The translations under genes were made by a program, and so were the position numbers. Positions 1 to 34,747 of a stretch of DNA of 64,000 bases are shown here, piece by piece. The notes under the pieces are model-generated. The model saw nothing but the letters and a program-made list of their open reading frames with translations. It was not told where the DNA came from and did not search any database. The stretch lies in the IMG/VR virus record IMGVR_UViG_3300049215_000771, positions 248,001 to 312,000 of that record; one strand, written 5' to 3'. The first letter of the stretch is position 1; each line of letters opens with the position of its first letter.

Positions 1-123
1 GACGATCTGAAGGATATACCACCGACCCTCGATTTCCTTCAGGTCAGTGATACCCTTCGTCACGGGCTTGTTGCTGGAGCAGCCAACCAGGGCGAACAAG
101 ATGATGGGAAGTAACTTTCTCAC
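1..123 (-). CDS. Putative lipoprotein, N-terminal part (runs off window start)
   Basis: GTG start overlaps the lysS TGA (GTGA); translates MRKLLPIILFALVGCSSNK..., a basic N-terminus, hydrophobic core and LVGC lipobox. Confidence 0.6.
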   Translation of the reverse strand, partial: MRKLLPIILFALVGCSSNKPVTKGITDLKEIEGRWYILQIV

Positions 124-1673
124 TTTGGCCTCTGATGAGGGAAGGTGATGACATCCCTGATGGCGTCCGTCTCGGCGTAGAGCATGGCGAGGCGGTCGAT
201 GCCAATGCCCAACCCTCCTGCGGGCGGCATCCCGACAATCAAGGCGTCAAGGAAGTCGTAGTCGATCCTTGGATCGTGTTGTCCCGGCTGGAGGCCCAAC
301 TGCTTCTCGAAGTTGGCCTGTTGCACGTCGGGGTTGTTGAGTTCAGTGTAAGCGTTGGCGATCTCCATACCGTTGACGAACAACTCCCAGCGGTCACAAA
401 TCCAGCCCTGCCACTGTTCGTCGTCACGAGGCTTCGCCAGTGGACAAAGGACGGATGGGTAGCCGAACACGAAGGTTGGCTCGGTCAACTGCGGCTGGAT
501 GATCTTGTCGAACACAGCCTCCAGACGATCAACCAGCGGCGTCAACAGGGGCAGACCGGACTTGTGCGCCAGTTCTGCGTCCAGGTCGTGGTGCCACTGA
601 ATGACGTACCTTGGGTCGCCCTGCATCAAACTAGGGCTGTTTGGATCGTACTGCCATTCCGGGGCAAGGACGTGTTCCAACAAGGTGATGTTGCAATACT
701 CCTGAAAAAGATCGCCGTAGGTCGTCGTCCTGGCATTGGCGATGTTGTTTAGGCCGAGAGCGCCGGCGATCTGGCGAGTGATGTAGGCCATCGACTCGAC
801 ATCACCGTAGGCTTCGTACAATTCGAGCATCGTAAACTCAGGATTGTGGGTCCGATCCACGCCCTCGTTCCTGAAGTTCTTGCCGATCTCGTAAATCTTC
901 TCCATACCGCCAACGAGCAACTTCTTCAGGTACAACTCCGGGGCAATGCGAAGGTACAAGTTGGCGTTGTAGGCGTTGTGATGGGTTTGGAACGGACGAG
1001 CAGCGGCCCCACCTGCAATGGGTTGTAGGATTGGGGTTTCTACTTCCGTGAAGCCGTGCTTGTTGAGACACTGCCTGATCTTCCAGACCATCTCGCTCCG
1101 CTTCTGGAGAGTTTTCACCGCCCCTTCCCGGTAGATCAGTTCCAGGTGTCGGTTGCGGGAAAAGACTTCAGGATCGGTAATTCCGTGGAACTTGTCGGGA
1201 GGCGTAGCCAGGCTTTTGCAAAGCATGGTGATCTCGTTAATGCGAAGGCTGATCTCGCCGGTCCTGGTGGCCGTGAGGTAGCCTTGAACGCCAACGATGT
1301 CGCCCGGCAAGAGATTCTGGACGATGTACCAGGGCATCGGGTAATCGGTGCCATTGATGCTGCAAGAACTTACGCCGTCCCACAGGTCGCCCTTGGAAGC
1401 CCAAATCTGAATGGTTTCCGTGGAGTCCCGGAGATGGAAAAATACCAGCTTGCCGAAGTCATTCTTGGACATGACCCGGCCAGCAGCCTTGAATGTGACT
1501 TCCTTGTTGTCCTTGTGCGTCTCGAATTGCCGGCGAATGGTGTCGATGGGCGTGATGCCCTCGAACTTCTGGCCGTAGGGGTCCAGATCGCCGTGCATGA
1601 TGCCGGTCGAGAGTTGTGACAGGATTTCCCGCCTGCGGAGGCGGTCTTGGTAGAGTTGATCTGCGGTGTGCAT
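120..1673 (-). CDS. lysS: Class II lysyl-tRNA synthetase (phage auxiliary gene)
   Basis: OB-fold N-domain (AGRVMSK..FGKLVFFHL), motif 1 GFTEVETPIL, motif 2 FRNEGVDRTHNPEFT, ELFVNGMEIANAYTELN, motif 3 GGLGIGIDRL. Confidence 0.95.
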   Translation of the reverse strand: MHTADQLYQDRLRRREILSQLSTGIMHGDLDPYGQKFEGITPIDTIRRQFETHKDNKEVTFKAAGRVMSKNDFGKLVFFHLRDSTETIQIWASKGDLWDGVSSCSINGTDYPMPWYIVQNLLPGDIVGVQGYLTATRTGEISLRINEITMLCKSLATPPDKFHGITDPEVFSRNRHLELIYREGAVKTLQKRSEMVWKIRQCLNKHGFTEVETPILQPIAGGAAARPFQTHHNAYNANLYLRIAPELYLKKLLVGGMEKIYEIGKNFRNEGVDRTHNPEFTMLELYEAYGDVESMAYITRQIAGALGLNNIANARTTTYGDLFQEYCNITLLEHVLAPEWQYDPNSPSLMQGDPRYVIQWHHDLDAELAHKSGLPLLTPLVDRLEAVFDKIIQPQLTEPTFVFGYPSVLCPLAKPRDDEQWQGWICDRWELFVNGMEIANAYTELNNPDVQQANFEKQLGLQPGQHDPRIDYDFLDALIVGMPPAGGLGIGIDRLAMLYAETDAIRDVITFPHQRPK

Positions 1674-1676
1674 TGA

Positions 1677-1738
1677 TTGATCCTTTACAAACAGCCTTGG
1701 AGATGATACCCCGTTTCCGGCTGTTTGTAAAGGATCAA
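1677..1738. repeat. Perfect 20-bp inverted repeat with 22-bp spacer upstream of lysS
   Basis: ttgatcctttacaaacagcc (1677-1696) and ggctgtttgtaaaggatcaa (1719-1738). Confidence 0.95.
1703..1731 (-). promoter_or_regulatory. Sigma70-type promoter for lysS
   Basis: Minus strand TTTACA-17 bp-TATCAT; the same hexamers recur at 13902-13929. Confidence 0.7.
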
Positions 1739-1744
1739 CGGGGA

Positions 1745-2347
1745 TTACTCGAACGTGTATGTCACGCCAACGTCGTACTTGAGTTCAGGGATGCCGATGT
1801 GGGTGCAAAGGTTATGTTTTTTCGCCTCCTTCGCCGTCAGATACCACTCGGCGTGGCCCTTGTCATGGATGATCTCGGTGAAATAGTTGTCGGGTTTGCC
1901 AACATTCTTCGAGATGATGGAGAAGATCAATTTATGCAATCTTTCCGTCTCCTTGGTGTCGGCTTTAACTTCTTCGACCTTTCCCCAGGAGGCGCTGGAA
2001 ACATCATGAAGCATCAGGGTGGCGTGTTTAGCCATGTAGCGTTGTTGGCCCATTGCGAACAACATGGCCCCGCAGGACATACCCTTTCCTTCAAGTACAG
2101 TAACAACAGGAAGGCTGGCCGACTGGATTTGGGCGATCATGTCGAGAAGGGAGTAGACCTGTCCGCCGTAGGAGTCGATGACGACGGGAATGACGGGTTG
2201 ATGGGTCTGGTGGGCCTTCTCCATTTCTTCGGTGAAGGCTTTGGCCCCATCTTGATCGAACTTGGTGACACGAACGATGACGGGTTGTGGCAGGAGTTCT
2301 TCGATCTTACCACGAATGCGAGGATCAACAGTAAGCGTGCGCCGCAT
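1745..2347 (-). CDS. clpP: ClpP-like serine protease
   Basis: IDSYGG, GMSCG (Ser), LMLHD (His), EWYLTAKEA matching the ClpP D-x-F-L-S-A-x-E-A segment. Confidence 0.85.
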   Translation of the reverse strand: MRRTLTVDPRIRGKIEELLPQPVIVRVTKFDQDGAKAFTEEMEKAHQTHQPVIPVVIDSYGGQVYSLLDMIAQIQSASLPVVTVLEGKGMSCGAMLFAMGQQRYMAKHATLMLHDVSSASWGKVEEVKADTKETERLHKLIFSIISKNVGKPDNYFTEIIHDKGHAEWYLTAKEAKKHNLCTHIGIPELKYDVGVTYTFE

Positions 2348-2579
2348 GGGATGCTCCGATTATTTCTTGTTCGACAATCATTCGGTCGATACAGTCACGG
2401 ACCATATCGGCCAAGGCCGTGTAGTAGAAGAAACTTTTCTCCGTTCCACATTTGTCACGATAGTTGATTATACGCTTCAGTTCAATACGAGCCGAGCGAA
2501 TATCTTCGCATATTTTGGTGTGGGTCCGATATTGGACAGTGAGAATACCATGCTCGTAGCTTACCCTAGTTTTCTTCAT
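2325..2579 (-). CDS. Hypothetical protein
   Basis: 84-aa ORF overlapping the clpP start, with a GTATATA motif just upstream. Confidence 0.55.
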   Translation of the reverse strand: MKKTRVSYEHGILTVQYRTHTKICEDIRSARIELKRIINYRDKCGTEKSFFYYTALADMVRDCIDRMIVEQEIIGASHAAHAYC

Positions 2580-2584
2580 GACAA

Positions 2585-2592
2585 CTATATAC
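2585..2592. promoter_or_regulatory. Putative bidirectional late-promoter motif (C/G)TAnATA
   Basis: CTATATA (+) and GTATATA (-) overlap in the 17-bp gap between divergent ATGs 2579 and 2597. Confidence 0.5.
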
Positions 2593-2596
2593 CTTC

Positions 2597-3199
2597 ATGT
2601 TAGACGGCTTCCGACAATACTTTGAGAGTTTGGCCCACTACACGCCTCGTGAGAACGGGCTTGCTGAACTTGCTCGGCTGGAGAAAGGTCACTACTTGAT
2701 CGTCCAGCCAGCAGACATCGAGACTGCCCATCAATACCTTAATGGGGCAGATGGACTACGGCACATATCGAAGGATATGGTTGTGACGGCTCAGGACATT
2801 GACTTCATGTCCCGAACCACCAAGGAAGCGATAGTTATCATGCCCATCCCGAAACGATGGTTCCGACGACCGCAGCTTGAGCAGAAGGGTGTAACAGGTG
2901 TGATTGGCGAGTTGTTGCCCCTGGGGGATGGCTGGCACTTGCCGGCCAACTATGTGTGGGGCTACTTCTCCAAATGGAACGAGGACCAGGAGAAGATGGT
3001 AGAACCGGGCCAGTTCTATCGCAATCAGAACTACCACGGGCACGACGGCTTGTACGAACTTTGGAAGCGGCAGCATCCCCAGCAGGAGAGGCCACAGACG
3101 CTAGACCGCCCTACGCCGAGAGTAGTTGCACCGTATAACCCGACCATCAATCGGTCATTCCACGGTTACAACACATTCGACTTCGATTCTTCACAATAA
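2597..3199 (+). CDS. Hypothetical protein, possible head-internal protein
   Basis: 200-aa ORF; N-terminus MLDGFRQYFES resembles a T4 capsid-targeting leader. Confidence 0.6.
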   Translation: MLDGFRQYFESLAHYTPRENGLAELARLEKGHYLIVQPADIETAHQYLNGADGLRHISKDMVVTAQDIDFMSRTTKEAIVIMPIPKRWFRRPQLEQKGVTGVIGELLPLGDGWHLPANYVWGYFSKWNEDQEKMVEPGQFYRNQNYHGHDGLYELWKRQHPQQERPQTLDRPTPRVVAPYNPTINRSFHGYNTFDFDSSQ

Positions 3200-3813
3200 C
3201 ATACCTTGCCGCAGTAGACAAGTCGTCTCGCATCAATAAGCGTGATGCCGCCACCTGGCATACAGTCACAGTCCGTGACTCGATGTCCGATGGCTTGTTC
3301 TGTGAAATTCAAAATGAAATCAGAATGGGAAATGAAAACAGCTTTGGCTGGTGAGCGGGCCAGCACTTCATGGACACGCTGAAGAAACTCCTTCGGCGTT
3401 TCTTTGCCCATGCGACCCAGGTGCGGGTCTACAGAAAACTTCAGCCCTGTTACTTCCTCAATGATCCTGGCTGAGTGCCGGCATCGGACGTAAGGGCTGG
3501 TGAAGGCTTCAAAATCCGCCAGATCAAACTCGTGGGCCAGGAACTCGGCGGTCCTATATACCTGGCGCACTCCAACAGGTGTGAGGTTTGCCGGCAGCCT
3601 TTGCCCTGTTGCCTCCCCGTGTCGGATCAGAAAAATCTGCTTGAGATAGAAGTCGTATTCTTCCGTGAAAAACCTACCCGTTTCCGGGTCGAAGAATCCG
3701 CTTTCGATTGCACCATCTTGTTCAGCACAAGAAAGTTTCGAGAACGCATCTCCGTGGTTGCAGCCTGTAACTACCCTTCCGTTGGAGTACAAGGCGGCGA
3801 TATAACTCGACAT
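3166..3813 (-). CDS. Histidine phosphatase (phosphoglycerate-mutase-like) family protein
   Basis: LIRHG, SPYVRCRHSA and distal ISH motifs; about 55-aa extra N-terminal segment; GGAGG RBS. Confidence 0.85.
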   Translation of the reverse strand: MSSYIAALYSNGRVVTGCNHGDAFSKLSCAEQDGAIESGFFDPETGRFFTEEYDFYLKQIFLIRHGEATGQRLPANLTPVGVRQVYRTAEFLAHEFDLADFEAFTSPYVRCRHSARIIEEVTGLKFSVDPHLGRMGKETPKEFLQRVHEVLARSPAKAVFISHSDFILNFTEQAIGHRVTDCDCMPGGGITLIDARRLVYCGKVCYCEESKSNVL

Positions 3814-3834
3814 CGGCCCCTCCTATGATGAGGG

Positions 3835-3841
3835 TATTTAG
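3835..3841 (-). promoter_or_regulatory. Putative late-promoter motif CTAAATA
   Basis: About 22 nt upstream of the 3813 start; close to T4 TATAAATA. Confidence 0.45.
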
Positions 3842-4050
3842 TCGCCCATCTCGCATGTTTCTTGTTCTTCTTCTTGCTTCGCATCCAAAGCAGCCAAACC
3901 CGAACTAACGGCGGCTGAGATCAAGAAGGAAAACACGCCGGCTCCCAAAAAATACCCCCAAATATCCTTGTTATTCAGGGCTAACCAAAACCCTGCAAAC
4001 AACAAGAACCCGGTCAACGAGAACAAACCAACAGAAACAAGAATCTTCAT
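3838..4050 (-). CDS. Small two-TM membrane protein
   Basis: Two hydrophobic stretches, acidic C-tail, GAGGAGGG RBS. Confidence 0.6.
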   Translation of the reverse strand: MKILVSVGLFSLTGFLLFAGFWLALNNKDIWGYFLGAGVFSFLISAAVSSGLAALDAKQEEEQETCEMGD

Positions 4051-4077
4051 ATTCCCTCCTCAGTGGGATTCTCCATT

Positions 4078-4941
4078 CTAGGCAGCTTCTTTACGGGCGT
4101 CGAGACATATTTTTGCTAAACCAGCAACATATTGAGCAGAAGTGGTTCCAAGTTGGGTCGGCAACTTAGCAAGGGCATCGAGTGGGTCGCCTCCCAGCGA
4201 TAACATTGTCGGCGGCGAATACGCAAACAAAGACTTCGAGAAGTAGGGGAAAGCGCCACGACCACCATAGTTGATGAAATTGTTGTTCACTTGATGGTCG
4301 GAGAGAGACATATCGAACGTGTATTGTCCTTCCAGGGCCGCACGTCCTACCAGTTCGGATATACCAATCGACAGCGCCACCCTATCGGTGTGTCGCCAGA
4401 TTTCCTTGCCAGCCATGACTTGCTCGTATGCCAGCATCTCAGTGAGATAGATGGTTCGGTCAAAAAACTCGACGGGCAGGTGGTCGAAATACACGGTGTT
4501 GCCGAGAGCCACCCAATCCCCTGATAGATGCTTGCCAAGGCTAGGGATATTTTCCTCAGCAAGTTCCTTCGTGAAGAAAGGATCGACCTGGAAGACAATG
4601 TGTGGTACATCTTTCCTGGGGATAGTGACGGGCCTGTTGAGAACGGAATCCGGTTCCAACATTACGAAAGGTTGTTTGACAGCTTCTCCTCGCAGTAGAT
4701 TGGCTATTGAGTACAACCCAGCGAGGCGGTCATAGCCACGCACTTCTCCCATGTTGTTGCTACCAAGGGTGCGTGGGTGCGAGAACAGATTGCGGCAGAA
4801 TTCAATTTTGGGAGCCAGTGATGTGAACGACAGCCCTACGGCTAGATTTTCCTCTAGCTTGTGTTGCTTGAAACTTTCGATCAGCAACTCAATCTGCCAC
4901 TGGTAGTAGGGCGTGTGTTCAATGTTGACGAAGTAATCCAT
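4078..4941 (-). CDS. GT-A fold protein resembling plant hydroxyproline O-arabinosyltransferase / peptidyl-serine galactosyltransferase (GT95/GT96-like)
   Basis: Collinear motifs YYQWQIELLIESFK, GYDRL, FVMLEPDSVLNRPV, LGN, FINY, FSK match remembered HPAT motifs YNTWQ, GYVVL, ILMxEPDHIIVKP, IGN, IIHY, FDK; start moved to MDYFVN. Confidence 0.55.
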   Translation of the reverse strand: MDYFVNIEHTPYYQWQIELLIESFKQHKLEENLAVGLSFTSLAPKIEFCRNLFSHPRTLGSNNMGEVRGYDRLAGLYSIANLLRGEAVKQPFVMLEPDSVLNRPVTIPRKDVPHIVFQVDPFFTKELAEENIPSLGKHLSGDWVALGNTVYFDHLPVEFFDRTIYLTEMLAYEQVMAGKEIWRHTDRVALSIGISELVGRAALEGQYTFDMSLSDHQVNNNFINYGGRGAFPYFSKSLFAYSPPTMLSLGGDPLDALAKLPTQLGTTSAQYVAGLAKICLDARKEAA

Positions 4942-4954
4942 GAACCTATAGGAG

Positions 4955-5326
4955 TTACTTCGGTCGATACTTGGAACATTTTTTATCCGTGACGATTGGC
5001 AGGAAGCATTGTTCATAGATGCGGTACACTTCGCTGTACGCTACACCCCATGATGCGTCATGCGACCGTTCTTCAAATTCGTCACAGGTCAAGGCATCAT
5101 GCAAGTGACTCCATGCCCTTGCGTGCGCCCACTCGTGGAGAAGTGTTTCAATGGCCGATGTTTCAGGTAGCTCTCTGTTGATGCGAATACAAAACTTATT
5201 CTCATTCAACGAACAGTCGCCGTCCCTGTGACACGTCATTTTTACTCGCCGCACCTTGATCGGATAGGCAGGCGAGCATTTTCTCTTCAACACGAGAACC
5301 AACTTCTTGTAGGATTCATATGCCAT
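4955..5326 (-). CDS. HEXXH zinc metallopeptidase-like protein (SprT/ImmA-like)
   Basis: IRIN...ETLLHEWAHA and distal H (RSHDASW); start MAYESY with GGAGGGG RBS. Confidence 0.7.
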   Translation of the reverse strand: MAYESYKKLVLVLKRKCSPAYPIKVRRVKMTCHRDGDCSLNENKFCIRINRELPETSAIETLLHEWAHARAWSHLHDALTCDEFEERSHDASWGVAYSEVYRIYEQCFLPIVTDKKCSKYRPK

Positions 5327-5337
5327 ATCCCCTCCAG

Positions 5338-5374
5338 GCAAACAAAAAACCCACGAGGAAATCCTCGTGGGTTT
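5338..5374 (-). terminator. Rho-independent terminator after the cREC gene
   Basis: 12-bp stem AAACCCACGAGG/CCTCGTGGGTTT, 4-nt loop, followed by a U-tract on the minus strand. Confidence 0.8.
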
Positions 5375-5380
5375 ATATAC
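5374..5380 (-). promoter_or_regulatory. Putative late-promoter motif GTATATA abutting the terminator 5' arm
   Basis: A transcript started here would begin inside the hairpin arm and could read into the HEXXH and GT genes. Confidence 0.4.
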
Positions 5381-5399
5381 TGCGTCAGAAACCAACATT

Positions 5400-5783
5400 T
5401 CATCGACGGATTTCTTCCAAAATACTGTCGATGCGGGCGGGAAGTTGGGTAAATGGCACCTGAATCACGTTGACGCCGCCCTGTTTGAGATACGAAACCA
5501 TGTTGCTGGCCCCGGCTGGGTTACAGCTATGGACCACAACAAGGTCAACGATGATCTCGTTATCGGCGATTAGTTTGGCAACTTCCATACCCGTGTCGCC
5601 ACGGTCGGAATTTACCATTTCTTCGCCGCCCAGGTCATGATCGAGAAACACCACATCGTACTTCTTCTTGAGAAGAAGATCGAAGGCTTCCGCCACGGTG
5701 TACGCCTCGTCATGCAACAGGATCGGCTTCATCTTCTGATGCCGATACTTGTTGTCGTCGAGGAACAAGATTCTAAATGCCAT
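5400..5783 (-). CDS. Cyclic-phosphate processing receiver domain (cREC_REC-like)
   Basis: ILFLDD, FLDHDLG, TG and VHSCNPAG motifs; no effector domain. Confidence 0.8.
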   Translation of the reverse strand: MAFRILFLDDNKYRHQKMKPILLHDEAYTVAEAFDLLLKKKYDVVFLDHDLGGEEMVNSDRGDTGMEVAKLIADNEIIVDLVVVHSCNPAGASNMVSYLKQGGVNVIQVPFTQLPARIDSILEEIRR

Positions 5784-6940
5784 TACTCCCCTTTCCTGGA
5801 AATCCGTTTCCGAAGACTCTCGTAGATGAAAGCCGCCCGCTCATCGACGGTATCACCGTCGTTGTTCCAAAGAGAGTTGATCGTTGCGCCGAGGCGTGTG
5901 CTGCCGCAGAAGTGGGCCAGACGCTCGGCGCACTGTTTTGCAGGTGGCAGCTTGCCAAAAACCACTCGATCATAGATGTAGAAGGTGAAAAACCCCGTCT
6001 GCTTCATGATCTTGCGCAGAACTTTGACGTTCACCTGGGCTGCGGCTTGCTGGGCGATCTGATTCCTGAGTTCAGAGTGGAAAACCAGGTAATCCTCGAT
6101 GGCGAGAGCAATCTCCTGGAGAGTCTCGTCGCTGACCTTGAACAGCGATTCCGCTTCTTCTTCGTGATTCTTGTAAGGCAACTTCGCCAATTTCCCGGCG
6201 TAGCGGCGACAGTTGTAGATCGTGTAGTGGGACTTCTGCAAATCTCGGCCCGCCATCTTGCCAGACTTGATGACCTTCTCTGTTCGGGCGTACACAAGTG
6301 CGGCGAGCGGTTGCAGAAAGCCACTCTTGCCGCCGATCAGGTTGCGGGCAGGGGCGCTAATCATGTTGGCGAGCCGCCCATTGAGTTTTGGGTCATACGG
6401 GTCGCAAGAGATGATATGTCCCAAAACCATGTCCGGGTTCTTCAGGAACCCGTCCTTGCTTTGGGGACGACAGTTTTCGAGGTTGCAATACAGTTCCGTG
6501 ATCTTGTCGGCGTCAAAAACCCGGCAAGAAACGATCTCTTTCTTGACCGAGTTCCACATTTCGTCCGAGGCCATCCAGTAAAGATAGAGGAGGAAACAGC
6601 AGCGATGGTGGTGCGAGGCCAGGGTCATGGCGTCCGTGTTTTCGGACTCGCCGATTGGGAATTCCCCAAGGGCTTCGATGCACAACCCTTTCTCGAACCA
6701 GCGAAGAATTTGCCCCATGTCGATGGGCTGACCACCACGATTGCGACCGTAGCCGCCGCAAAGCTGCTGAAGCAGCATGTGAACCACGACCTCGACCGTC
6801 AGAAGAGCAACAACCGAGTTGCTGTAGTTACCTCGCTTCATGGATTTGAAGTCGGGCATCGGCAGGAACTTCTTCGGCAATTCCCGCTTGCGGTTCTTGA
6901 ATTTCTCAGGGTTTGTGAAATCGGCGAGATACATTCCCAT
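5783..6940 (-). CDS. Hypothetical protein
   Basis: 385-aa ORF coupled to the downstream gene (TAATG); no recognised motif. Confidence 0.7.
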   Translation of the reverse strand: MGMYLADFTNPEKFKNRKRELPKKFLPMPDFKSMKRGNYSNSVVALLTVEVVVHMLLQQLCGGYGRNRGGQPIDMGQILRWFEKGLCIEALGEFPIGESENTDAMTLASHHHRCCFLLYLYWMASDEMWNSVKKEIVSCRVFDADKITELYCNLENCRPQSKDGFLKNPDMVLGHIISCDPYDPKLNGRLANMISAPARNLIGGKSGFLQPLAALVYARTEKVIKSGKMAGRDLQKSHYTIYNCRRYAGKLAKLPYKNHEEEAESLFKVSDETLQEIALAIEDYLVFHSELRNQIAQQAAAQVNVKVLRKIMKQTGFFTFYIYDRVVFGKLPPAKQCAERLAHFCGSTRLGATINSLWNNDGDTVDERAAFIYESLRKRISRKGE

Positions 6941-6965
6941 TTTTGGCTCCGAGGTTGGTATCCAG

Positions 6966-7011
6966 ACAGTCGAGCGTCAAAAACAGTCGAGCGTCAAATG
7001 ACGCTCGACTG
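6966..7011. repeat. Three copies of a 13-bp box (two direct, one inverted)
   Basis: cagtcgagcgtca at 6967-6979 and 6984-6996; reverse complement at 6999-7011. Confidence 0.9.
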
Positions 7012-7061
7012 CAACCGAAATGAGATGCTACCACGGAAATCGAGGTTTGTAAACCTCAATT

Positions 7062-7685
7062 CTAAAATTCGTTGTGCTTCTGGAAGAGTACGTCGTGGAC
7101 GATCACCTTCTTCAAGTGATTCCCATACCGGCCCTTCCAGCGCTTTGCCATCATGCAGAACCGGCTGGTGTGTTCCGGGCGGTCCTCCCAAATTTCCAGA
7201 ACTTCCAGGTCTGAGTGAACGATCTCCCGCTCGATGAGTTCGATCTTGATCTCGAAAGTATCTCCGTGCTGCGGGTATCCCTTCATGCCACGGAAGTAAT
7301 ACTCGTCGAAGATCAGTTCCTTCACCGCCAGGATTTCCTTCACTCGATGCCGAATCTTGGCCGGACGACCCGTCATCAAGTAGCAGTTGGTGTCTTCCCT
7401 CGCCCGGTCAGCCTTGTAAGCAGCCAGCGTTTCAGAAATCCACATTTCCTCCGGGATCGGGTCCGGCACGAGCGGCGGCTGGAGCGTTTCGATCCGGCCC
7501 CACCAACCAGAAAACGGCCACAAGTTCCCCGTTTTCTCCAAGTACAGAACTTCTCCTTCGGGCCGATCCGGGGAGCGGAACAGCGTGCCGTCGAAGTCGT
7601 AAATGGAGGCACGGGAACGCTTTCGGACGTTCCGTGGAGCTTCAGCCCCAGGCAGCCACTTCGATAAGGTTTGTTCTTTGCTCAT
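7062..7685 (-). CDS. HAD phosphatase, Swiss-Army-Knife RNA-repair type (HAD_SAK_1-like)
   Basis: IYDFDGTLFRSP, WWG, LMTGR and IWEDR motifs; GGAGG RBS. Confidence 0.8.
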   Translation of the reverse strand: MSKEQTLSKWLPGAEAPRNVRKRSRASIYDFDGTLFRSPDRPEGEVLYLEKTGNLWPFSGWWGRIETLQPPLVPDPIPEEMWISETLAAYKADRAREDTNCYLMTGRPAKIRHRVKEILAVKELIFDEYYFRGMKGYPQHGDTFEIKIELIEREIVHSDLEVLEIWEDRPEHTSRFCMMAKRWKGRYGNHLKKVIVHDVLFQKHNEF

Positions 7686-7745
7686 AATCCTCCCGCAACC
7701 ACGACTACGAGAGGAAGACCCCGTTTTATGGTTCCAGGTTCGGAA

Positions 7746-7773
7746 ATTGTACCAAGATTCTTGGGATTGTAAA
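7746..7773 (-). promoter_or_regulatory. Sigma70-type promoter with a palindrome in the spacer
   Basis: TTTACA-16 bp-TACAAT with extended -10 TG; spacer holds ccaaga-t-tcttgg (7752-7764). Confidence 0.6.
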
Positions 7774-7775
7774 GG

Positions 7776-8330
7776 TTACTTGCCGGCGTATCGAACCGTG
7801 ATGTCCATGCCTTCGTCGGTCGGGGTGATCTGGACCTGGAAACCATCGGGTCGGCGGGCGCTCATTTCGTTCATGGCGATAGCCCTAGCCTGTTTGATGG
7901 CCGAGTTCGGCTCGATATGACCGTGGACGTGGAAAACCCATGTGTTGGCCAGTGGGCGTTCTAGTGTGGCTTTGACGGTAGCATAACCACTACGGCCACC
8001 CTTCATCATGATGGTTTTACCTATTTTTTCCTTGACAGGTTCGGCTGGTGCGTCGGCGACATCGCTTTTGGGCATCTCTCCGACTGGCACACGAGGAGAT
8101 GTCCCATATGGCGTGTGAGTCGTGGCTGGATCGGCTGAGGCGACCATAGCGGGCCGGTCGGCGGCAGGAGAAGCAGGACGATTCATCAGTTTGTTCGCAC
8201 CCCAGGCGCTTGCGGCAAGTCCACCAAGGAGGCCCATTGTTTGTAGAAACTTGTTGTCCTTCAACGCCTCTACCAATTCAACATCCCTAACTTCCAACCA
8301 CTCGTTGAATGTTGGAAGTTTATTCTTCAT
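7776..8330 (-). CDS. Hypothetical protein with capsid-targeting-like leader and hydrophobic segment
   Basis: Start moved to MKNKLPTFNEWLEVRD; the longer ORF merely overlaps the upstream low-complexity tail. Confidence 0.6.
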   Translation of the reverse strand: MKNKLPTFNEWLEVRDVELVEALKDNKFLQTMGLLGGLAASAWGANKLMNRPASPAADRPAMVASADPATTHTPYGTSPRVPVGEMPKSDVADAPAEPVKEKIGKTIMMKGGRSGYATVKATLERPLANTWVFHVHGHIEPNSAIKQARAIAMNEMSARRPDGFQVQITPTDEGMDITVRYAGK

Positions 8331-10047
8331 CGCCGCCATCGTCATCTCCCTTGTCATCGCCAAATCCGTGGTGCTTCGGTTTATCGAATCCGTGCTTCGG
8401 TTTATCGCCGCCGAAGTGGTGCTTGTTTTCTTCGTGATCGTCATCGCCCCCGAAGCCTGGTCGCTTCTCGTTCCTGCCGAAAGCTGGCTTCTTCGTATCT
8501 TCTTCATCCGGGCCGCTGTGTTTGCTTCCCTTCAGCTTGCCGACATTATCCTTCCAGCGGTTGGTAGAAAGATGGCGTTTGACATGATCGAACTCATGGC
8601 CGTGCGGTGCCCGACCCAAATGCTTGGTGTATGCAGGGTTGACAGACTTCTTGCCATCTTCGCCCTGGGTGTACGGAGACAAATCTTTGTCATCGTGACT
8701 CAAGAAGGCATCCGTCTCCGGGCCGACTTGCTTCGCCATTTGCAGCCACTCACGAATCTTGCTTTTGGTCAAGCCCGTGTGGGTGTTCTTCATGTCGTAG
8801 AACTGGTCAGGGTCATATTTGTTCTTTGCGCCCCAACTGTAGAGTTTCACCAGGTAAGCAATATCGCTGGCTTCTTGCTTGCTCCAGCCACCACCAATGA
8901 GCATGTTTTTTACATCTTCAGGCTCGTTATTGCGCAGTACCCAGGCCGGGGCGAGCCAACGGTCGCCACGAAAATCTTCTGGCATATCTTCTTCGTCAAA
9001 ATCAACGCCTGGAAAAACGGCGCTGAGAAGTCCAGTCTGCTTGAAAGACTTCATGTACTTGCGTGGGTCACTGTCCGGGTGTTCCAACCCATCCAGGAAC
9101 TCCTTGCGAACGTGGTCCTTCGGCACATCCTGAAGATCACGATGTCGTTCAAGGGCTTGTTTGTATTTGTCAGGAATCTTATCGGGGTTGCCGTAACGAT
9201 TTAGTTGCTTCATATAGCGCAGGGCCGTTGCCGGGTCTTCGCCTAGACGCTTGTTGAAATCACCAACAGCCACGACCTCGCCGTTCTTCAAGTGGTGAGC
9301 GCCGCCGTGAGGGTCCGTCAGTTCCGAGTTGTCGCCGTCTGCCGTGGTCAACGGAATGTACATAGCGTTCATCGTGAAGTCACGGTTCTGCGAATCATCT
9401 TCAATCGTGGATGCCGCTTCGCCTTTTTCTGCTTGTACTCGTCGGCTTTTTGGGTGTTTGCTGAGGGTGGCCAAGTCGAACTTTTCGCCGTTGATCTCGG
9501 CAGTCATTTCTATTTCCTTACCGGCTTTGTCCCAACGAGAAGCGTAGAAAATCTTGTTCTTTGTACCTGGGGCGGGGAGTTTGGCGTAGCGTTCATCCGA
9601 GGCATATTCGCCGCACCGTGGTTTTGTTTCGGTGAAGCCTGCATCGGGTTGAACGAGGATCATGCGCATTTCAGAAGGGGTGGCATCCGTCACCAGGTCG
9701 TAGTTCCTGGGGGTCTTTCCCTTCAGGTGGTCACGAACAGCACCACCTGTTAGCCACAGGTTCTTCTTCTTCAACTGTGGTTCTACTTCACCCTTGGTCT
9801 TCTCAATAGTCGTATAGCCAACGCCGACTTTATCGCTGTCGGTGAAGGCTTTGATGAGAAGTCGTAGGTTCGGGTGAGTCGTTCTGTTCACAGTGAACGG
9901 AGCGAACTCCTTGGAACCTTCAGTCTTCTGAAGTTTGATCTTGGACGTGATCTGAGGACGCTTCGGGCCTTCGCTGCCGCCACTGCTGCTGCTTCCGCCT
10001 TCCGCCTCTTCACGCAATGTGAAATACTTACCAAATAGGGTTTTCAT
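8320..10047 (-). CDS. Class II tRNA nucleotidyltransferase (CCA/poly(A) polymerase) homologue with altered catalytic motifs
   Basis: GGAVRD..NYDLVTDA, NRDFTMNAMY, EDPATALR; no HD domain; low-complexity acidic/His/Gly C-tail. Confidence 0.85.
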   Translation of the reverse strand: MKTLFGKYFTLREEAEGGSSSSGGSEGPKRPQITSKIKLQKTEGSKEFAPFTVNRTTHPNLRLLIKAFTDSDKVGVGYTTIEKTKGEVEPQLKKKNLWLTGGAVRDHLKGKTPRNYDLVTDATPSEMRMILVQPDAGFTETKPRCGEYASDERYAKLPAPGTKNKIFYASRWDKAGKEIEMTAEINGEKFDLATLSKHPKSRRVQAEKGEAASTIEDDSQNRDFTMNAMYIPLTTADGDNSELTDPHGGAHHLKNGEVVAVGDFNKRLGEDPATALRYMKQLNRYGNPDKIPDKYKQALERHRDLQDVPKDHVRKEFLDGLEHPDSDPRKYMKSFKQTGLLSAVFPGVDFDEEDMPEDFRGDRWLAPAWVLRNNEPEDVKNMLIGGGWSKQEASDIAYLVKLYSWGAKNKYDPDQFYDMKNTHTGLTKSKIREWLQMAKQVGPETDAFLSHDDKDLSPYTQGEDGKKSVNPAYTKHLGRAPHGHEFDHVKRHLSTNRWKDNVGKLKGSKHSGPDEEDTKKPAFGRNEKRPGFGGDDDHEENKHHFGGDKPKHGFDKPKHHGFGDDKGDDDGGDEE

Positions 10048-10081
10048 GTATCCTTCCCAATCGAGATAACAGCGTCTATGT

Positions 10082-10088
10082 TATTTAC
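10082..10088 (-). promoter_or_regulatory. Putative late-promoter motif GTAAATA
   Basis: About 35 nt upstream of the CCA-like start. Confidence 0.45.
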
Positions 10089-10127
10089 TCTTTGCCAGAC
10101 TTTTTTCCCGAACGACCTGGGAAAATG

Positions 10128-10592
10128 TCATGGTGTTGGCGGCGCTTGCCAGCCAAACTTGTAGAGTAGATAGCCGCCCAAAATCATGAACAAGACCTTC
10201 AAGACCCAATCGAAGATTTGATTCATGCGTGTGTCGTGGTGAGATGTCTTGAGTTGGATTCCTTCCAGCTTCAATTCCATCACTTGCAACTTACCTTTCA
10301 ATTCTTCTACCTTGTTTTGGAGGAGATCAAGTTCTTTCTTGGTTTCGCCTGTGACATCTTTCGTTTCGAGGATGGTAAGTCGTTGGGTTACGGAGTGTTG
10401 TAGTTCCATGAATTTATCCAATCGCTCGTCGAGAGCATTCTGTCTTTCTACTAGCATCTTGACCCGTTCATCTATCCTTGACGTAAGATCGAACACCAAC
10501 TTAATGGATTCAGACACCTGGGTATAAAACTGCTCTGCAATCAAGGCTTTTTCTTCCGTGCTTGTGCTTCGAGTGGGCATATTTCCATCCAT
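10128..10592 (-). CDS. Coiled-coil protein with C-terminal TM helix (XhlA/holin-like architecture)
   Basis: Long heptad pattern followed by WVLKVLFMILGGYLLYKFGW. Confidence 0.6.
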   Translation of the reverse strand: MDGNMPTRSTSTEEKALIAEQFYTQVSESIKLVFDLTSRIDERVKMLVERQNALDERLDKFMELQHSVTQRLTILETKDVTGETKKELDLLQNKVEELKGKLQVMELKLEGIQLKTSHHDTRMNQIFDWVLKVLFMILGGYLLYKFGWQAPPTP

Positions 10593-10608
10593 TCTTCTGA
10601 GGTAGCGA

Positions 10609-10620
10609 CTACATATCTAC
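10609..10620. promoter_or_regulatory. Putative bidirectional late-promoter motif
   Basis: CTACATA (+, 10609-10615) and GTAGATA (-, 10614-10620) in the 31-bp gap between divergent genes. Confidence 0.5.
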
Positions 10621-10623
10621 ACC

Positions 10624-11142
10624 ATGAACGATGAACTTAAAACCGCCCAGGCTGAAGAATCGTCTCCTTTGGAAGAAATACCAACCACCAAAGGCGAACT
10701 TATCGAAGATGATCTCGATGACATTGAAAGCCTCATGCCCACCATGAATGTTGCTGTGCCCCAAGGAATGGTTCAAAAAGCTGAGATCATTTCAGACACT
10801 CAGCTTACCGGCATCTACGACGAAATCCTCACAATGCTTCGTAAGGAACACGAACAAGTAACAGATTACATTGACAACTTTGCCGAAATGGTTATCAACG
10901 GCGGCGATCCCAGCACATCTAGCAAAGAAGCACTGGTCAACCTCGTGAAGATCAGGACTGACATCCCCGACAAGATGGTGAAGGTTGCTGACTTGATGAC
11001 CCGGCTCAAGATGAAAGACCCCAACACCTACAAGCCATACTTAAACGCCCATCAGACCAACAACGTAGTGATTGGCGACACGACTGGCGAGCGGCGAGCC
11101 ATTTTGGACCATATCAAGAAGGCGAAGAAGAAGAATAAATAA
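10624..11142 (+). CDS. Hypothetical protein, weakly reminiscent of T4-type small terminase
   Basis: Acidic N-terminus, two helices, then TNNVVIG and a basic tail; resemblance only. Confidence 0.35.
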   Translation: MNDELKTAQAEESSPLEEIPTTKGELIEDDLDDIESLMPTMNVAVPQGMVQKAEIISDTQLTGIYDEILTMLRKEHEQVTDYIDNFAEMVINGGDPSTSSKEALVNLVKIRTDIPDKMVKVADLMTRLKMKDPNTYKPYLNAHQTNNVVIGDTTGERRAILDHIKKAKKKNK

Positions 11143-11224
11143 CGGCTACTAACATATCATGTCATCAATTTGAAAGGGGTATGACATGAAACCAGTGTGG
11201 CCTCCTCAGCCAAAGGTAAGGAAA

Positions 11225-12565
11225 ATGAAGTTCAATACTAATAGTTGGTTCAAGCGAAAACTTCTCGAAGCTGGCGATCCTGCCGGCAACGCAGATGGCA
11301 ACCCGCCAATGGGCAACATGGGCGGCGGTCCAGGTGGGTTTGGTGCTGCGCAACCGCCACAGCCAGGACAAGACCCGAACGTAGCAAATCCAGCGATGGC
11401 GAAAACCCCCGACGCCGGCCAAGGTCCAAACGATCCATCCAAATCAGGCCAACAACCCGATGTTTCCGGTGATCCTGCGGCTCCTGACATGCCGGATGAA
11501 GGCGACGAGATGGACTTTGAGCAGTGGAAGGACTCGTACTTCAAAGAATCCGTCAAGGGCGATGTCAACAAACTGATTGACATGATCCATCAAGTTCGTG
11601 ATCTCGAACTCGACCCATATCCACGGAAGTTTGTTGAGGACAATTTGCAGATCGTTTTCTTGCGCCAGAACGCCAACATTGACAAGGCCAGCAAGGAAAT
11701 CCGCAAACTCATCAAGCAGGAACTCGATCAGAACAACCCATCTACAACCCTGGTCAACCATATCACCACTGTTCTCCAGCAGATGCCAGAACTTAGTAAT
11801 GTGTTCATCAAGTTGAAAGGGTTGCTGGGCATGAAGGGCGATTTGCATCGTAAATACATTGCCGCTTTGATTGGTGGTGTTCAGGTCGGCACGGGCGGCA
11901 ACGCCGAAGATGTAATCTACAACGAGAAAGACTACTCGATCCGTGTCTCCACCAGGTACAACGACCGCTGGGGCCGAGTTGACATCGGCAAATGGGCGTT
12001 GCGTGAAGACGACCCGGAGCGTTACCTGTCCGAGCCTGAGTTGAAGCGATTGGAAGGTGAAGGTTCGCCGGGTGAGAAGGAAGAACTGCGCAAGCGCATC
12101 GTTGTGGAATCCATCGCCGAGCAGTTCAAGCAAAGGGCGTTCATTGTGAACGTCGTTGGCAAGAACGGAACTGTCTACACCCTGGGCTGGGACTTGGCTG
12201 GCAGTTTGAAGGCCGCTTACACGGCGGGCAAGCTGGTAGTGAGAACCATTCAGGCCGAGAACTCGGACTCCATGATTACGGATGACGGAGAGATCATTCC
12301 GTATGTTGACATCAAAGTTCGCTATATGAAGGAAACAGGCGGACAGGATGAGGATGGCAAGCCTGAGAAGGAAGAACACGATTTCCTGGAAAGGATTGAC
12401 GGCACCTTGTTCCTTACTTCTCGATTCAACATTTTGCGTGAGGCGGCATCCAGCTTCCAGGGTATTGTGTTGAAAGAAACCCCCTACACCGGCAACCCTT
12501 CTGACTTGAGGGTATTGCAGCGGTGTGTGCCGAGCGCTCCTGAAATTTTACTGAGGCAGTGCTAA
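11225..12565 (+). CDS. Hypothetical virion/prohead-associated protein
   Basis: MKFNTNSWFKRKLLEA leader, Pro/Gly/Asp-rich linker, then a globular region; upstream ATG 11186 also possible. Confidence 0.65.
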   Translation: MKFNTNSWFKRKLLEAGDPAGNADGNPPMGNMGGGPGGFGAAQPPQPGQDPNVANPAMAKTPDAGQGPNDPSKSGQQPDVSGDPAAPDMPDEGDEMDFEQWKDSYFKESVKGDVNKLIDMIHQVRDLELDPYPRKFVEDNLQIVFLRQNANIDKASKEIRKLIKQELDQNNPSTTLVNHITTVLQQMPELSNVFIKLKGLLGMKGDLHRKYIAALIGGVQVGTGGNAEDVIYNEKDYSIRVSTRYNDRWGRVDIGKWALREDDPERYLSEPELKRLEGEGSPGEKEELRKRIVVESIAEQFKQRAFIVNVVGKNGTVYTLGWDLAGSLKAAYTAGKLVVRTIQAENSDSMITDDGEIIPYVDIKVRYMKETGGQDEDGKPEKEEHDFLERIDGTLFLTSRFNILREAASSFQGIVLKETPYTGNPSDLRVLQRCVPSAPEILLRQC

Positions 12566-12780
12566 TGTGTTGCTGTTTTGGTGGCTGTTTGAGTTCCGGC
12601 AGGGAGAAGTACCATGAAGGATGGGTTGTTTTGTACAACAAAGGCAACCCCGTTCCTTACTTGACGAGTACATGGTCAGACTACCCGCCGAAGTATTTCA
12701 AAACGAAGGAAGAAGCCGAGGCAGTGTGCCAGGCTTTGAGATTCGGCGGCTGGGCCGCAAAAGGAGGAGTATGCCAGTAA
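12565..12780 (+). CDS. Small hypothetical protein
   Basis: TAATG coupling to the upstream gene and overlap with the downstream start. Confidence 0.4.
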   Translation: MCCCFGGCLSSGREKYHEGWVVLYNKGNPVPYLTSTWSDYPPKYFKTKEEAEAVCQALRFGGWAAKGGVCQ

Positions 12781-13256
12781 CAATGTTCATGGAATTCGTT
12801 GACCGCCAACAACGGGAATCGAGAAGGCATCTCAAGATCATGGAGAAACTTCTCAAAAGCCAAGGTATGCAGGTGAAGTCCCATCTTGAAGACGAAGACC
12901 CCTACATTTTCGTCAAAACAACTACACCAAGGCTGAGTTTTGACGGCATCAGAATCTACGAGATAGGCGAAGCCCTTGCCTATCGGGTCGTGAAAGAAGA
13001 AAAAACTGAACCTTACGGCAAGGCGTACTCATTGAATCTTGAACAAATGTTCAACGATTTCATGAGTGAAAACAAGATGGAATCGGAGCAAGCGGGCAAG
13101 AAGGTAATCGAGAGTGTTTTGAACGAGTTGAAGAAATTCTTCGACAAAAGTGCAACAGCCGAGAAGGAATTGAAAGCTGGCGACTTGGATGGGACTGGCA
13201 TCATCCTGAGAACAGGTGGTACGGATTACTCCAGCCTGGTCTTCAACAAGCCATAA
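12771..13256 (+). CDS. Hypothetical protein
   Basis: AGGAGGAG RBS before ATG 12771; followed by a terminator. Confidence 0.7.
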   Translation: MPVTMFMEFVDRQQRESRRHLKIMEKLLKSQGMQVKSHLEDEDPYIFVKTTTPRLSFDGIRIYEIGEALAYRVVKEEKTEPYGKAYSLNLEQMFNDFMSENKMESEQAGKKVIESVLNELKKFFDKSATAEKELKAGDLDGTGIILRTGGTDYSSLVFNKP

Positions 13257-34744: not shown

Positions 34745-34747
34745 AAT

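What the first reader, a model, noticed from the sequence alone, without database searches (positions are those of the whole stretch)
4078..4941. Phage protein resembling plant protein O-glycosyltransferases (HPAT/SGT1)
Seen: seven collinear motifs (YYQWQ..FK, GY..L, EPD..L.RP, LGN, W....D..A, INY, FSK). Established: GT95 HPAT and GT96 SGT1 glycosylate Pro/Ser-rich extensin repeats and use an EPD/DxD metal motif. The comparison is from memory, not a search. Inference: a phage member of a mainly plant/algal peptide O-glycosyltransferase fold, probably late-expressed from the motif at 5374.
Basis: partly seen in the sequence, partly recalled or inferred. Interest (0 to 1): 0.68.

Follow-up and report, generated by a model that had tools for sequence, protein, structure and literature searches.

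The report
Megaphage HPAT-like glycosyltransferase gene
This gene of a 533-kb uncultured phage from a moss metagenome encodes a small soluble sugar-transferring enzyme whose nearest named relatives are the plant and algal enzymes that put sugars on cell-wall proteins; it is a conserved gene of a whole group of giant phages, but what it glycosylates is still unknown.

Summary
The ORF at 4078-4941 (-) is real: 287 aa, with the start confirmed by 35 homologues that all begin at the same Met. The family-conserved ones are W15, Q16, F24, K25, D98, Y225, F234 and K236.

So the remembered resemblance holds at fold and remote-homology level. Formal family membership is not met.

The family has about 287 clusters at 50% identity and occurs only in uncultured jumbo phage contigs. 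It usually sits directly behind a minimal SprT-like zinc peptidase, inside an RNA-repair and protease island next to the tail module.

The "late promoter at 5374" is a terminator-like hairpin in the intergenic region upstream of the peptidase gene.

A DNA-modifying role is unlikely. A protein or peptide acceptor is plausible but untested, and Hyp specificity is not supported across the family.

The parts
4078..4941 (-). HPAT-like GT-A glycosyltransferase, 287 aa (P0001). Soluble catalytic domain only. [E]-P-D98 lies after strand beta4. C-terminal Y225...G229..P232.F234.K236 motif.
4955..5326 (-). Minimal SprT-like zincin peptidase, 123 aa. True start is ATG 5326, behind a GGAGG. HEWAH plus a third His are invariant in 21 homologues. 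Its stop lies 13 nt before the GT start.
5347..5374 (-). Terminator-like hairpin (12-bp stem, 7 GC pairs, followed by a T-run) in the cREC/SprT intergenic gap, preceded by GTATATAAA.
3838..4050 (-). 70-aa ORF with two hydrophobic segments, 27 nt downstream of the GT. One metatranscriptome contig spans the GT 3' end and this ORF.
3166..3813 (-). Histidine phosphatase (His_Phos_1), a recurrent downstream neighbour of the GT (cluster c10, 12 loci).
5400..5783 (-). cREC_REC (cyclic-phosphate processing receiver domain), upstream neighbour.
8320..10047 (-). tRNA nucleotidyltransferase (PolyA_pol head domain), conserved upstream member of the same-strand gene block (cluster c2, 34 loci).

Best explanation
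The gene encodes a cytoplasmic, single-domain, nucleotide-sugar-dependent glycosyltransferase. It has a GT-A fold of the retaining GT8-like type. It belongs to a phage-specific, highly divergent branch of the HPAT (PF23452; GT95/GT96-related) lineage.

Shown:
- the fold;
- the HPAT family as nearest named neighbour;
- conservation of a [H/E/D]-x-D motif directly after strand beta4 and of a C-terminal Y..G..P.F.K motif;
- absence of a membrane anchor;
- restriction of the family to uncultured jumbo and megaphages;
- tight pairing with an intact SprT-like zinc peptidase.

Inferred:
- D98, with E96, holds the divalent metal and diphosphate of a UDP-sugar, and K236 contacts the diphosphate, by analogy with GT8 enzymes recalled from memory.
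- The enzyme transfers one sugar to a hydroxyl of a protein or peptide acceptor in the infected cell. The acceptor could be a phage virion protein, such as the Thr/Pro-rich repeats of the 2048-aa ORF or of the 4553-aa tail-module protein, or a host protein.
- It possibly acts together with the neighbouring peptidase.

The confidence given is for 'active HPAT-like GT-A glycosyltransferase'. For a protein or peptide acceptor I estimate about 0.45. For the specific fibre/TMP repeats, about 0.15.
For: Fold and family:
- AF2 model pLDDT 94.6, pTM 0.92.
- Foldseek against PDB returns GT6/GT8/WbbM at E about 1e-7.
- ESM Atlas: HPAT clusters TM 0.75-0.78; bacterial PqqD+HPAT TM 0.75-0.77; a phage O-FucT+GlcNAc-transferase cluster TM 0.76-0.77.
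- Language-model neighbours are viral clusters partly labelled PF23452.
- HPAT is the sole Pfam hit on two orthologues and on 3 of 150 representatives.
- Conserved catalytic-type motifs.
- No transmembrane segment.

Family size: 287 representatives at E<=1e-3, all about 250-300 aa.

Context:
- The SprT-like gene is immediately upstream in 26 of 37 loci, with a gap of -26 to +17 nt except one ORF call at +69, and with HExxH intact.
- In one sub-lineage the GT abuts a GLF/DegT/GT2/Nucleotid_trans glycan cluster.
- The PqqD (peptide-recognition) fusion in bacterial HPAT relatives and the protein-directed nature of many top structural matches fit a peptide acceptor.
- Fragments of the operon, 100% identical, occur in metatranscriptome assemblies.
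Against: - No sequence-level hit of P0001 to any curated family.
- HPAT hits on orthologues are below the gathering score.
- This protein has lost three residues conserved in most of the family: N9, N74 and H224.
- GT8-like folds also include sugar- and lipid-directed enzymes such as LgtC, so fold alone does not fix the acceptor.
- The P4H-like gene does not co-occur with the family.
- The neighbours are mostly RNA-repair genes, not glycan or virion genes.
- The complex prediction with the peptidase gave no verdict.
- Metatranscriptome contigs cannot exclude DNA carry-over.
Confidence: 0.8

Rival explanations
1. It is a glycan-building or host-surface-modifying GT: it adds a sugar to an oligosaccharide, LPS/capsule intermediate or lipid-linked sugar, as GT8 enzymes such as LgtC do. 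The result would change the host surface or extend a glycan that another enzyme started.
For: - GT8 enzymes LgtC and WbbM are among the best solved matches.
- In the L003-type phages the gene abuts a GLF, DegT, GT2, ATP-grasp, Nucleotid_trans cluster.
- The own genome also has an NDP-sugar epimerase and a GT9-like gene.
- PMC7824862 reads jumbo-phage GT clusters as surface-polysaccharide modifiers.
Against: - In most loci, including this one, no glycan genes are nearby.
- The family is a syntenic core gene of the clade rather than a sporadic accessory gene.
- HPAT-type models match better (TM 0.75-0.78) than a GT8-labelled Atlas cluster (0.64).
- There is no membrane association.
Confidence: 0.2
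2. It is part of the RNA-repair and host-conflict island and acts on a nucleic-acid or nucleotide-derived acceptor, for example a modified tRNA base or ribose, or an ADP-ribose-type product. It would protect or restore tRNAs attacked by host nucleases.
For: Recurrent same-strand neighbours are a CCA-adding enzyme, HAD_SAK_1 phosphatase, cREC_REC, His_Phos_1 and a weak tRNA_lig_CPD hit. PMC7824862 assigns these to RNA repair.
Against: - No GT-A of this lineage is known to me to act on RNA.
- Synteny within one phage clade can reflect shared ancestry, not shared function.
- The closest partner is a peptidase, which points to proteins.
- ClpP in the same block shows the island is functionally mixed.
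Confidence: 0.1
3. It glycosylates phage DNA bases (hydroxymethyl- or hydroxy-pyrimidines) to evade restriction. This is the outcome the first reader named as refuting.
For: DNA glycosylation is the classical role of phage GTs. The genome is very large and must evade host nucleases.
Against: - The own genome has no thymidylate-synthase-family hydroxymethylase or hydroxylase and no match to the Tet/JBP model. The Tet/JBP model also rang in none of the 14 control genomes, so that negative is weak.
- 3 of 4 nearly complete genomes carrying the family (this one included) lack a ThyA homologue.
- The characterised RB69 and DLP3 DNA arabinosyltransferases give GT-B type structural matches, not GT-A (PMC13326640).
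Confidence: 0.05
4. It is a catalytically dead or repurposed GT-A fold, for example a sugar-nucleotide-binding or structural protein.
For: P0001 and its closest relatives have lost consensus residues N9, N74 and H224. The first position of the DxD-like motif varies.
Against: D98, Y225, G229, F234, K236 and the WQ..LL.ESF helix are retained across sequences as little as about 23% identical. That fits purifying selection on an active site.
Confidence: 0.07

Closest known systems
Hydroxyproline O-arabinosyltransferases HPAT1-3 (CAZy GT95; Pfam PF23452) and the related extensin Ser alpha-galactosyltransferase SGT1 (GT96)
   Same: - Best named structural neighbours: TM 0.75-0.78 over about 265-273 residues.
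- HPAT is the only Pfam family that touches orthologues, aligned collinearly from the N-terminus through the DxD region.
- Related viral Atlas clusters are partly labelled PF23452.
- Similar catalytic-domain size.
   Different: - No HMM hit for this protein, and orthologues score below the cut-off.
- No type II membrane anchor (PMC8012813 describes HPATs as Golgi type II membrane proteins); this one is cytoplasmic.
- It sits in a phage, paired with a zinc peptidase.
- No consistent prolyl hydroxylase partner.
- Donor and acceptor are unknown.
GT8 retaining glycosyltransferases (glycogenin, LgtC, Gat1, WbbM C-terminal domain) and GT24 UGGT
   Different: - About 8-12% identity and no PF01501 hit.
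- Lower shape similarity than to HPAT models: TM about 0.5-0.55 by Foldseek against PDB.
- The His that binds metal in GT8 is Asn in this protein.
Virus-encoded protein glycosyltransferases (PBCV-1 A64R; mycobacteriophage virion glycosylation enzymes)
   Different: No detectable sequence relation. No evidence here that virion proteins are glycosylated.
Bacterial PqqD-HPAT fusion proteins (ESM Atlas cluster, Pseudomonadota)
   Same: TM 0.75-0.77 to the model. These are prokaryotic, cytoplasmic HPAT-like domains.
   Different: They carry a PqqD peptide-recognition domain, which the phage protein lacks. The phage gene is instead paired with a SprT-like peptidase. I could not retrieve their sequences.

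Membership tests
HPAT family (Pfam PF23452 / CAZy GT95-GT96) | Match to the family HMM at or above the gathering score (23.9 bits) | tested here: not met
   P0001 has no hit at E<=10. Orthologues in L012 and L017 score 18.2 and 15.7 bits. 3 of 150 representatives hit, best E 0.0014.
HPAT family (Pfam PF23452 / CAZy GT95-GT96) | Catalytic domain fold closest to HPAT models | tested here: met
   TM 0.75-0.78 to three eukaryotic HPAT clusters, the best named matches. Both sides of the comparison are predicted models.
HPAT family (Pfam PF23452 / CAZy GT95-GT96) | Type II membrane anchor, Golgi-lumenal enzyme | tested here: not met
   The protein starts at strand beta1. Maximum 19-residue hydropathy is 0.86, with no TM segment.
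HPAT family (Pfam PF23452 / CAZy GT95-GT96) | Hydroxyproline acceptor, which needs a prolyl 4-hydroxylase | tested here: inconclusive
   The own genome has a 199-aa 2OG-FeII_Oxy_3 protein about 208 kb away. It is absent from 4 of 5 other large genomes carrying the family.
HPAT family (Pfam PF23452 / CAZy GT95-GT96) | UDP-L-arabinofuranose (HPAT) or UDP-galactose (SGT1) donor; transfer to a peptide | not testable with these tools
   The only hint is a UDP-galactopyranose mutase (GLF) gene next to the GT in the L003-type phages. There is none in the own genome.
GT8 (Pfam PF01501) | HMM match | tested here: not met
   No PF01501 hit for P0001 or any of the 150 representatives.
GT8 (Pfam PF01501) | GT-A fold with an acidic metal-binding motif after beta4 | tested here: met
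Phage DNA base glycosyltransferases | A hydroxymethyl- or hydroxy-pyrimidine-forming enzyme (ThyA homologue or TET/JBP) in the genome | tested here: not met
   Neither is found in the 532,729-bp record. The Tet_JBP model also rang in none of the 14 control genomes, so that half of the test is weak.
SprT-like zincin peptidase (neighbour gene, PF10263) | HExxH plus third zinc ligand; HMM match | tested here: met
   26.3 bits against a cut-off of 25.6. H64, E65, H68 and H89 are invariant in 21 sequences.

The most novel reading that the evidence does not exclude
A clade of giant phages carries, as a conserved two-gene cassette, a cytoplasmic HPAT-lineage peptide O-glycosyltransferase and a dedicated minimal zinc peptidase. 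Together they modify a protein target: either the phage's own Thr/Pro-rich tail or fibre repeats (an extensin-like glycoprotein on a virion) or a host factor during takeover. This would be the first functional GT95/96-type protein glycosylation system outside the eukaryotic secretory pathway.
Probability: 0.25. Interest if true: 0.75.

Novelty: new variant of a known kind. Interest (0 to 1): 0.5.

Why it matters
HPAT/SGT1-type enzymes are known as Golgi enzymes of plants and green algae that start extensin and peptide-hormone glycosylation. A soluble, phage-specific branch that is a syntenic core gene of uncultured 200-670 kb phages would widen the known range of this lineage. It would also offer a small, easily expressed catalytic domain for structural and specificity work. 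No solved HPAT structure turned up among the matches in the PDB copy searched here.

If the acceptor is a virion protein, it would add giant phages to the few viruses known to glycosylate their particles with their own enzymes. If the acceptor is a host protein, it would be a new kind of takeover effector.

If the enzyme turns out to be an ordinary glycan GT, the finding is routine annotation of a previously unnamed family.

Tried and rejected
Searches that found nothing for P0001:
- Pfam, PHROGs, NCBIfam and PDB sequence searches, with the single sequence and with the A1 profile.
- tblastn of P0001, P0036 and P0027, and megablast of window 1-12000, against 50,697 deposited phage genomes: no match.

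Attempts to obtain true HPAT sequences for a profile-profile test failed:
- PF23452 was not found in the own genome, in the two MAGs that carry the family, or in 401 genomes of the phylum of the Chloracidobacterium-labelled MAG G001.
- A second word search with the 150-sequence profile brought only family members.

Other attempts:
- Complex prediction of the GT with the SprT-like peptidase gave no verdict (score 0.00). This is neither for nor against binding.
- The P4H-like oxygenase as an obligatory partner is rejected, because it is absent from 4 of 5 other large genomes.
- GTATATAA(A) as a recurrent promoter motif is rejected: 11 copies in 532 kb on both strands, about what chance gives, in mixed contexts.
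- The sigma-70 scan was not above shuffles.
- RB69/DLP3-type DNA arabinosyltransferases were considered and rejected as relatives; their best structural matches are GT-B type enzymes.

Full report
**The gene.** The window is bases 248,001-312,000 of a 532,729-bp virus record that IMG/VR classes as a provirus. The same protein is also recorded on a 673-kb contig. Near-identical DNA is held by runs labelled moss metagenome.

The finding's coordinates, 4078-4941 on the minus strand, are an open frame of 287 codons plus stop. A longer frame reaches back to 5016.

The listed motifs are all in the translation. Conservation was measured over 150 cluster representatives:
- Strongly conserved: W15 (100%), Q16, L19, L20, S23, F24, N51, H55, D98 (87% D, 9% H), Y225 (97%), G229, P232, F234, K236, P253.
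- Weakly conserved: GY..L and LGN.
- Position 96 of 'EPD' is H 55%, E 14%, D 11%. The family motif is therefore [H/E/D]-x-D, a DxD variant.
- This protein and its nearest relatives differ from the consensus at N9 (H), N74 (A) and H224 (N).

**What curated libraries say.** They say nothing for this protein:
- Pfam, at E up to 10.
- PHROGs.
- NCBIfam.
- PDB sequences, with the single protein and with the A1 profile.
- tblastn against 50,697 deposited phage genomes, also with two distant family members.

The word-indexed search found 43 unnamed relatives. The exhaustive profile search found 287 cluster representatives at E<=1e-3, of which 256 were at E<=1e-10. Nearly all of the 150 listed are about 250-300 aa, single-domain proteins.

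In IMG/VR the family sits on 30 contigs of up to 527 kb. Among 185,579 species genomes it occurs on only two MAG contigs, of 48 kb and 546 kb, and both show the phage-type gene neighbourhood. It is therefore a family of uncultured jumbo and megaphages.

**Fold.** With the 36-sequence alignment, AlphaFold2 gives pLDDT 94.6 and pTM 0.92. The order of elements is beta1, alpha1 (the WQ.ELLIESFK helix), beta2, beta3, alpha, beta4 (residues 92-95), then D98. That is the GT-A layout, with the acidic motif at its canonical place.
- Foldseek against the PDB returns only GT-A glycosyltransferases: BoGT6a, ABO GTA/GTB, alpha3GalT, WbbM and LgtC, at E about 1e-7 and TM about 0.5.
- BFVD gives many viral GT-A proteins.

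**The HPAT question.** Four lines of evidence bear on it.
1. In the ESM Atlas shape search, two unnamed viral clusters come first (TM 0.83 and 0.78). The best named matches are then HPAT (PF23452) clusters of Chlorophyta and Streptophyta, at TM 0.75-0.77, 263-271 residues aligned, rmsd 3.6-3.8 Å. Also listed are a bacterial PqqD+HPAT cluster (0.75) and a phage 1005-aa O-FucT+GlcNAc-transferase cluster (0.77). A cluster partly labelled GT8 scores 0.64.
2. The Atlas's own model of this protein gives the same picture, with HPAT clusters at 0.74-0.78 plus one shorter HPAT-labelled cluster at 0.69.
3. By language-model features, the top named clusters for both P0001 and the distant member P0036 are viral clusters of 274-277 aa in which 16% and 40% of members carry PF23452.
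4. At sequence level, the HPAT HMM hits 3 of 150 representatives weakly (best E 0.0014). In a six-frame scan of 29 viral records that carry the family, it touches only two places, and both are the orthologue of this gene. For the L012 orthologue, HPAT is the only Pfam hit: 18.2 bits, residues 4-133 against HMM positions 4-139. For L017 it scores 15.7 bits, residues 60-136 against HMM positions 64-143. Both are below the 23.9-bit cut-off.

PMC8012813 states that HPAT1-3 founded GT95, that GT95 is related to GT96 (SGT1), and that these are Golgi type II membrane proteins.

My reading is that the family is a divergent, phage-specific offshoot of the HPAT lineage, which itself has a GT8-like retaining GT-A fold. 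Formal membership is not met for this protein. I could not obtain HPAT sequences, so the motif-by-motif correspondence was not tested.

**Differences from HPAT.** The phage protein has no hydrophobic anchor: the maximum 19-residue hydropathy is 0.86. It begins at beta1, so it is the bare catalytic domain and should act in the cytoplasm.

The genome does encode a 199-aa 2OG-Fe(II) oxygenase of the prolyl-hydroxylase-type family PF13640. It lies about 208 kb away. The family is missing from 4 of 5 other large genomes that carry the GT, three of which are 98-100% complete. Hydroxyproline is therefore not supported as a family-wide acceptor.

**Neighbourhood.** I called ORFs in 37 GT-carrying loci and clustered them. 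The arrangement is strongly conserved.
- On one strand lies a block of structural-looking genes that ends in a giant protein. In the window these are 10624-11142, 11186-12565, 12621-13256, 13944-14474 and the 4553-aa ORF 14499-28160. Baseplate wedge and tail proteins follow at 33167-37879.
- Diverging from it on the other strand are:
  - a tRNA nucleotidyltransferase (8320-10047);
  - in many loci a HAD_SAK_1 phosphatase;
  - a small SprT-like peptidase;
  - the GT;
  - often a histidine phosphatase (3166-3813) and ClpP (1745-2347).
- A cREC_REC gene (5400-5783) also recurs.

PMC7824862 interprets cRec, SAK-HAD and CCA-adding enzymes of jumbo phages as RNA repair. It interprets ClpP and SprT-like peptidases as proteases likely aimed at host proteins.

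The tightest link is with the peptidase. It lies directly upstream of the GT in 26 of 37 loci, and in the window itself. The gaps run from -26 to +17 nt, apart from one ORF call at +69. This holds across GT sequences as little as about 26% identical to P0001. H64, E65, H68, H89 and several other positions are invariant in 21 peptidase sequences.

That alignment also corrects the window's peptidase gene. It starts at ATG 5326, behind a GGAGG, and not at 5398.

In lineages without the peptidase, the GT follows the CCA enzyme directly. In one of these lineages (the L003 type) it abuts a convergent cluster with UDP-galactopyranose mutase (GLF), a DegT aminotransferase, a GT2, an ATP-grasp protein, a Nucleotid_trans protein and a sulfotransferase. 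Galactofuranose is the hexose counterpart of L-arabinofuranose, the HPAT sugar (my knowledge). This is only a hint about the donor, because the mutase could serve the other transferases.

The own genome has no GLF. It does have an NDP-sugar epimerase/dehydratase and a GT9-like gene about 120 kb away.

**The 'late promoter at 5374'.** On the minus strand the cREC gene stops at 5400. GTATATAAA follows. Then comes a 12-bp stem (7 GC pairs) with a 4-nt loop and a T-run at 5374-5347. Then GGAGG and the peptidase start at 5326. So the site is first of all an intrinsic-terminator-like hairpin in a 73-nt intergenic gap.

A promoter overlapping it cannot be excluded. However, GTATATAA occurs only 11 times in the genome, about the chance number, and in mixed contexts. 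The sigma-70 scan is not above shuffles.

The GT lies 13 nt behind the peptidase gene, so it is most simply the second gene of a unit that starts in this gap. Nothing supports late timing. Inference only: the company of RNA-repair and protease genes on the strand opposite the tail module would fit early or middle expression at least as well.

Metatranscriptome assemblies from moss and plant samples hold 100%-identical pieces over 3957-4257, 5145-5303 and 6390-6887. The first piece spans the GT 3' end, the spacer and the downstream 70-aa ORF. The second lies in the peptidase gene. This is consistent with transcription, but contigs cannot show strand, ends or level, and DNA carry-over is possible.

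**Acceptor.** A DNA acceptor is unlikely.
- The genome has no thymidylate-synthase-family enzyme and no Tet/JBP match. The Tet/JBP model rang in none of the 14 control genomes, so that negative is weak.
- Of the four nearly complete (98-100%) genomes carrying the family, this one included, three lack a ThyA homologue.
- The characterised phage DNA arabinosyltransferases give GT-B type structural matches (PMC13326640).

A protein or peptide acceptor is my preferred reading, for four reasons:
- The nearest family glycosylates peptides.
- Bacterial HPAT-like domains are fused to the PqqD peptide-recognition domain.
- Many top solved matches act on proteins: glycogenin, Gat1, UGGT, GlyE and PBCV-1 A64R.
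- The conserved partner is a peptidase.

The 2048-aa ORF at 45649-51795 holds more than 90 'ITITP' 11-residue repeats. The 4553-aa ORF has TPTPTPAAPATPATP-type stretches near residues 3780-4200. Nothing ties them to the enzyme beyond being in the same genome.

A sugar or lipid acceptor (a GT8-like role) and an RNA-linked role remain open as rivals.

The complex prediction for the GT and the peptidase gave no verdict and is not evidence either way.

**Verdict.**
- Observation: confirmed.
- Interpretation: partly supported. The HPAT-like glycosyltransferase fold holds. The acceptor is untested. Late expression from 5374 is not supported.
- Classification: a new, phage-specific variant of a known kind of enzyme. 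It is of moderate interest because it is a core gene of giant phages, it extends a plant/algal lineage to phages, and it forms a conserved pair with a zinc peptidase.

Noticed in passing
window 45649-51795 (+): A 2048-aa ORF whose middle (about 46.6-51.0 kb) consists of more than 90 tandem 11-residue Ile/Thr/Pro repeats (ITITP..., 33-nt period). This explains the strong negative GC skew at 46-50 kb. It has no Pfam or PHROG hit at either end and lies at the end of the baseplate/tail module, so it is probably a fibre.
   Followed up: partly
window 14499-28160 (+): A single 4553-aa ORF, Ala/Pro/Leu/Thr-rich, with no Pfam family. It lies directly upstream of the baseplate genes. It has Pro/Thr-rich repeats (TPTPTPAAPATPATP...) around residues 3780-4200. 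Homologues (cluster c7) occupy the same position in 26 related loci. It may be a tape-measure-like or injected giant protein.
   Followed up: partly
window 5347-5374 (-): Strong intrinsic-terminator-like hairpin (12-bp stem, then TTTTTGTTT) between the cREC_REC and SprT-like genes. It shows that the longest-ORF start of the SprT-like gene (5398) is wrong; the true start is 5326.
   Followed up: yes
window 120-10047 (-): Host-conflict island on the minus strand: class II aminoacyl-tRNA synthetase of the D/K/N type (120-1673), ClpP (1745-2347), histidine phosphatase (3166-3813), cREC_REC (5400-5783), an unknown 385-aa protein (5783-6940) and a tRNA nucleotidyltransferase (8320-10047).
   Followed up: partly
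G000:C1:460471-460707 (-), = L042:1462-2061 (-): 199-aa 2OG-Fe(II) oxygenase of the prolyl-4-hydroxylase-type family PF13640 in the same phage genome, outside the window. It is present in only 1 of 5 other large genomes carrying the GT family.
   Followed up: partly
G000:C1:370021-371391 and 378687-379616 (L044): A GT9-like (heptosyltransferase family) protein and an NDP-sugar epimerase/dehydratase lie about 8 kb apart, with a subtilase, a Prim-Pol and a TPR protein between and around them. The phage therefore has further sugar-metabolism genes away from the GT studied.
   Followed up: no
L003:8837-16787 (and L004, L005, L037-L039): In one sub-lineage of related jumbo phages the GT abuts a glycan gene cluster: UDP-galactopyranose mutase, DegT aminotransferase, GT2, ATP-grasp, Nucleotid_trans and a sulfotransferase.
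   Followed up: partly
L010 (CALFYV010000090.1, 546 kb) and L009 (JAYVUD010000138.1, 48 kb): These two contigs are binned into bacterial MAGs (Bacteriovoracaceae, Chloracidobacterium). They carry the phage-type gene order around the GT, so they are probably megaphage contigs binned by mistake, or prophage-like regions.
   Followed up: no
window 4078-4941, residues 9, 74, 224: P0001 and its two or three closest relatives replace residues conserved in most of the family: N9->H, N74->A and H224->N. This may reflect a change of donor or metal use in this sub-clade.
   Followed up: no
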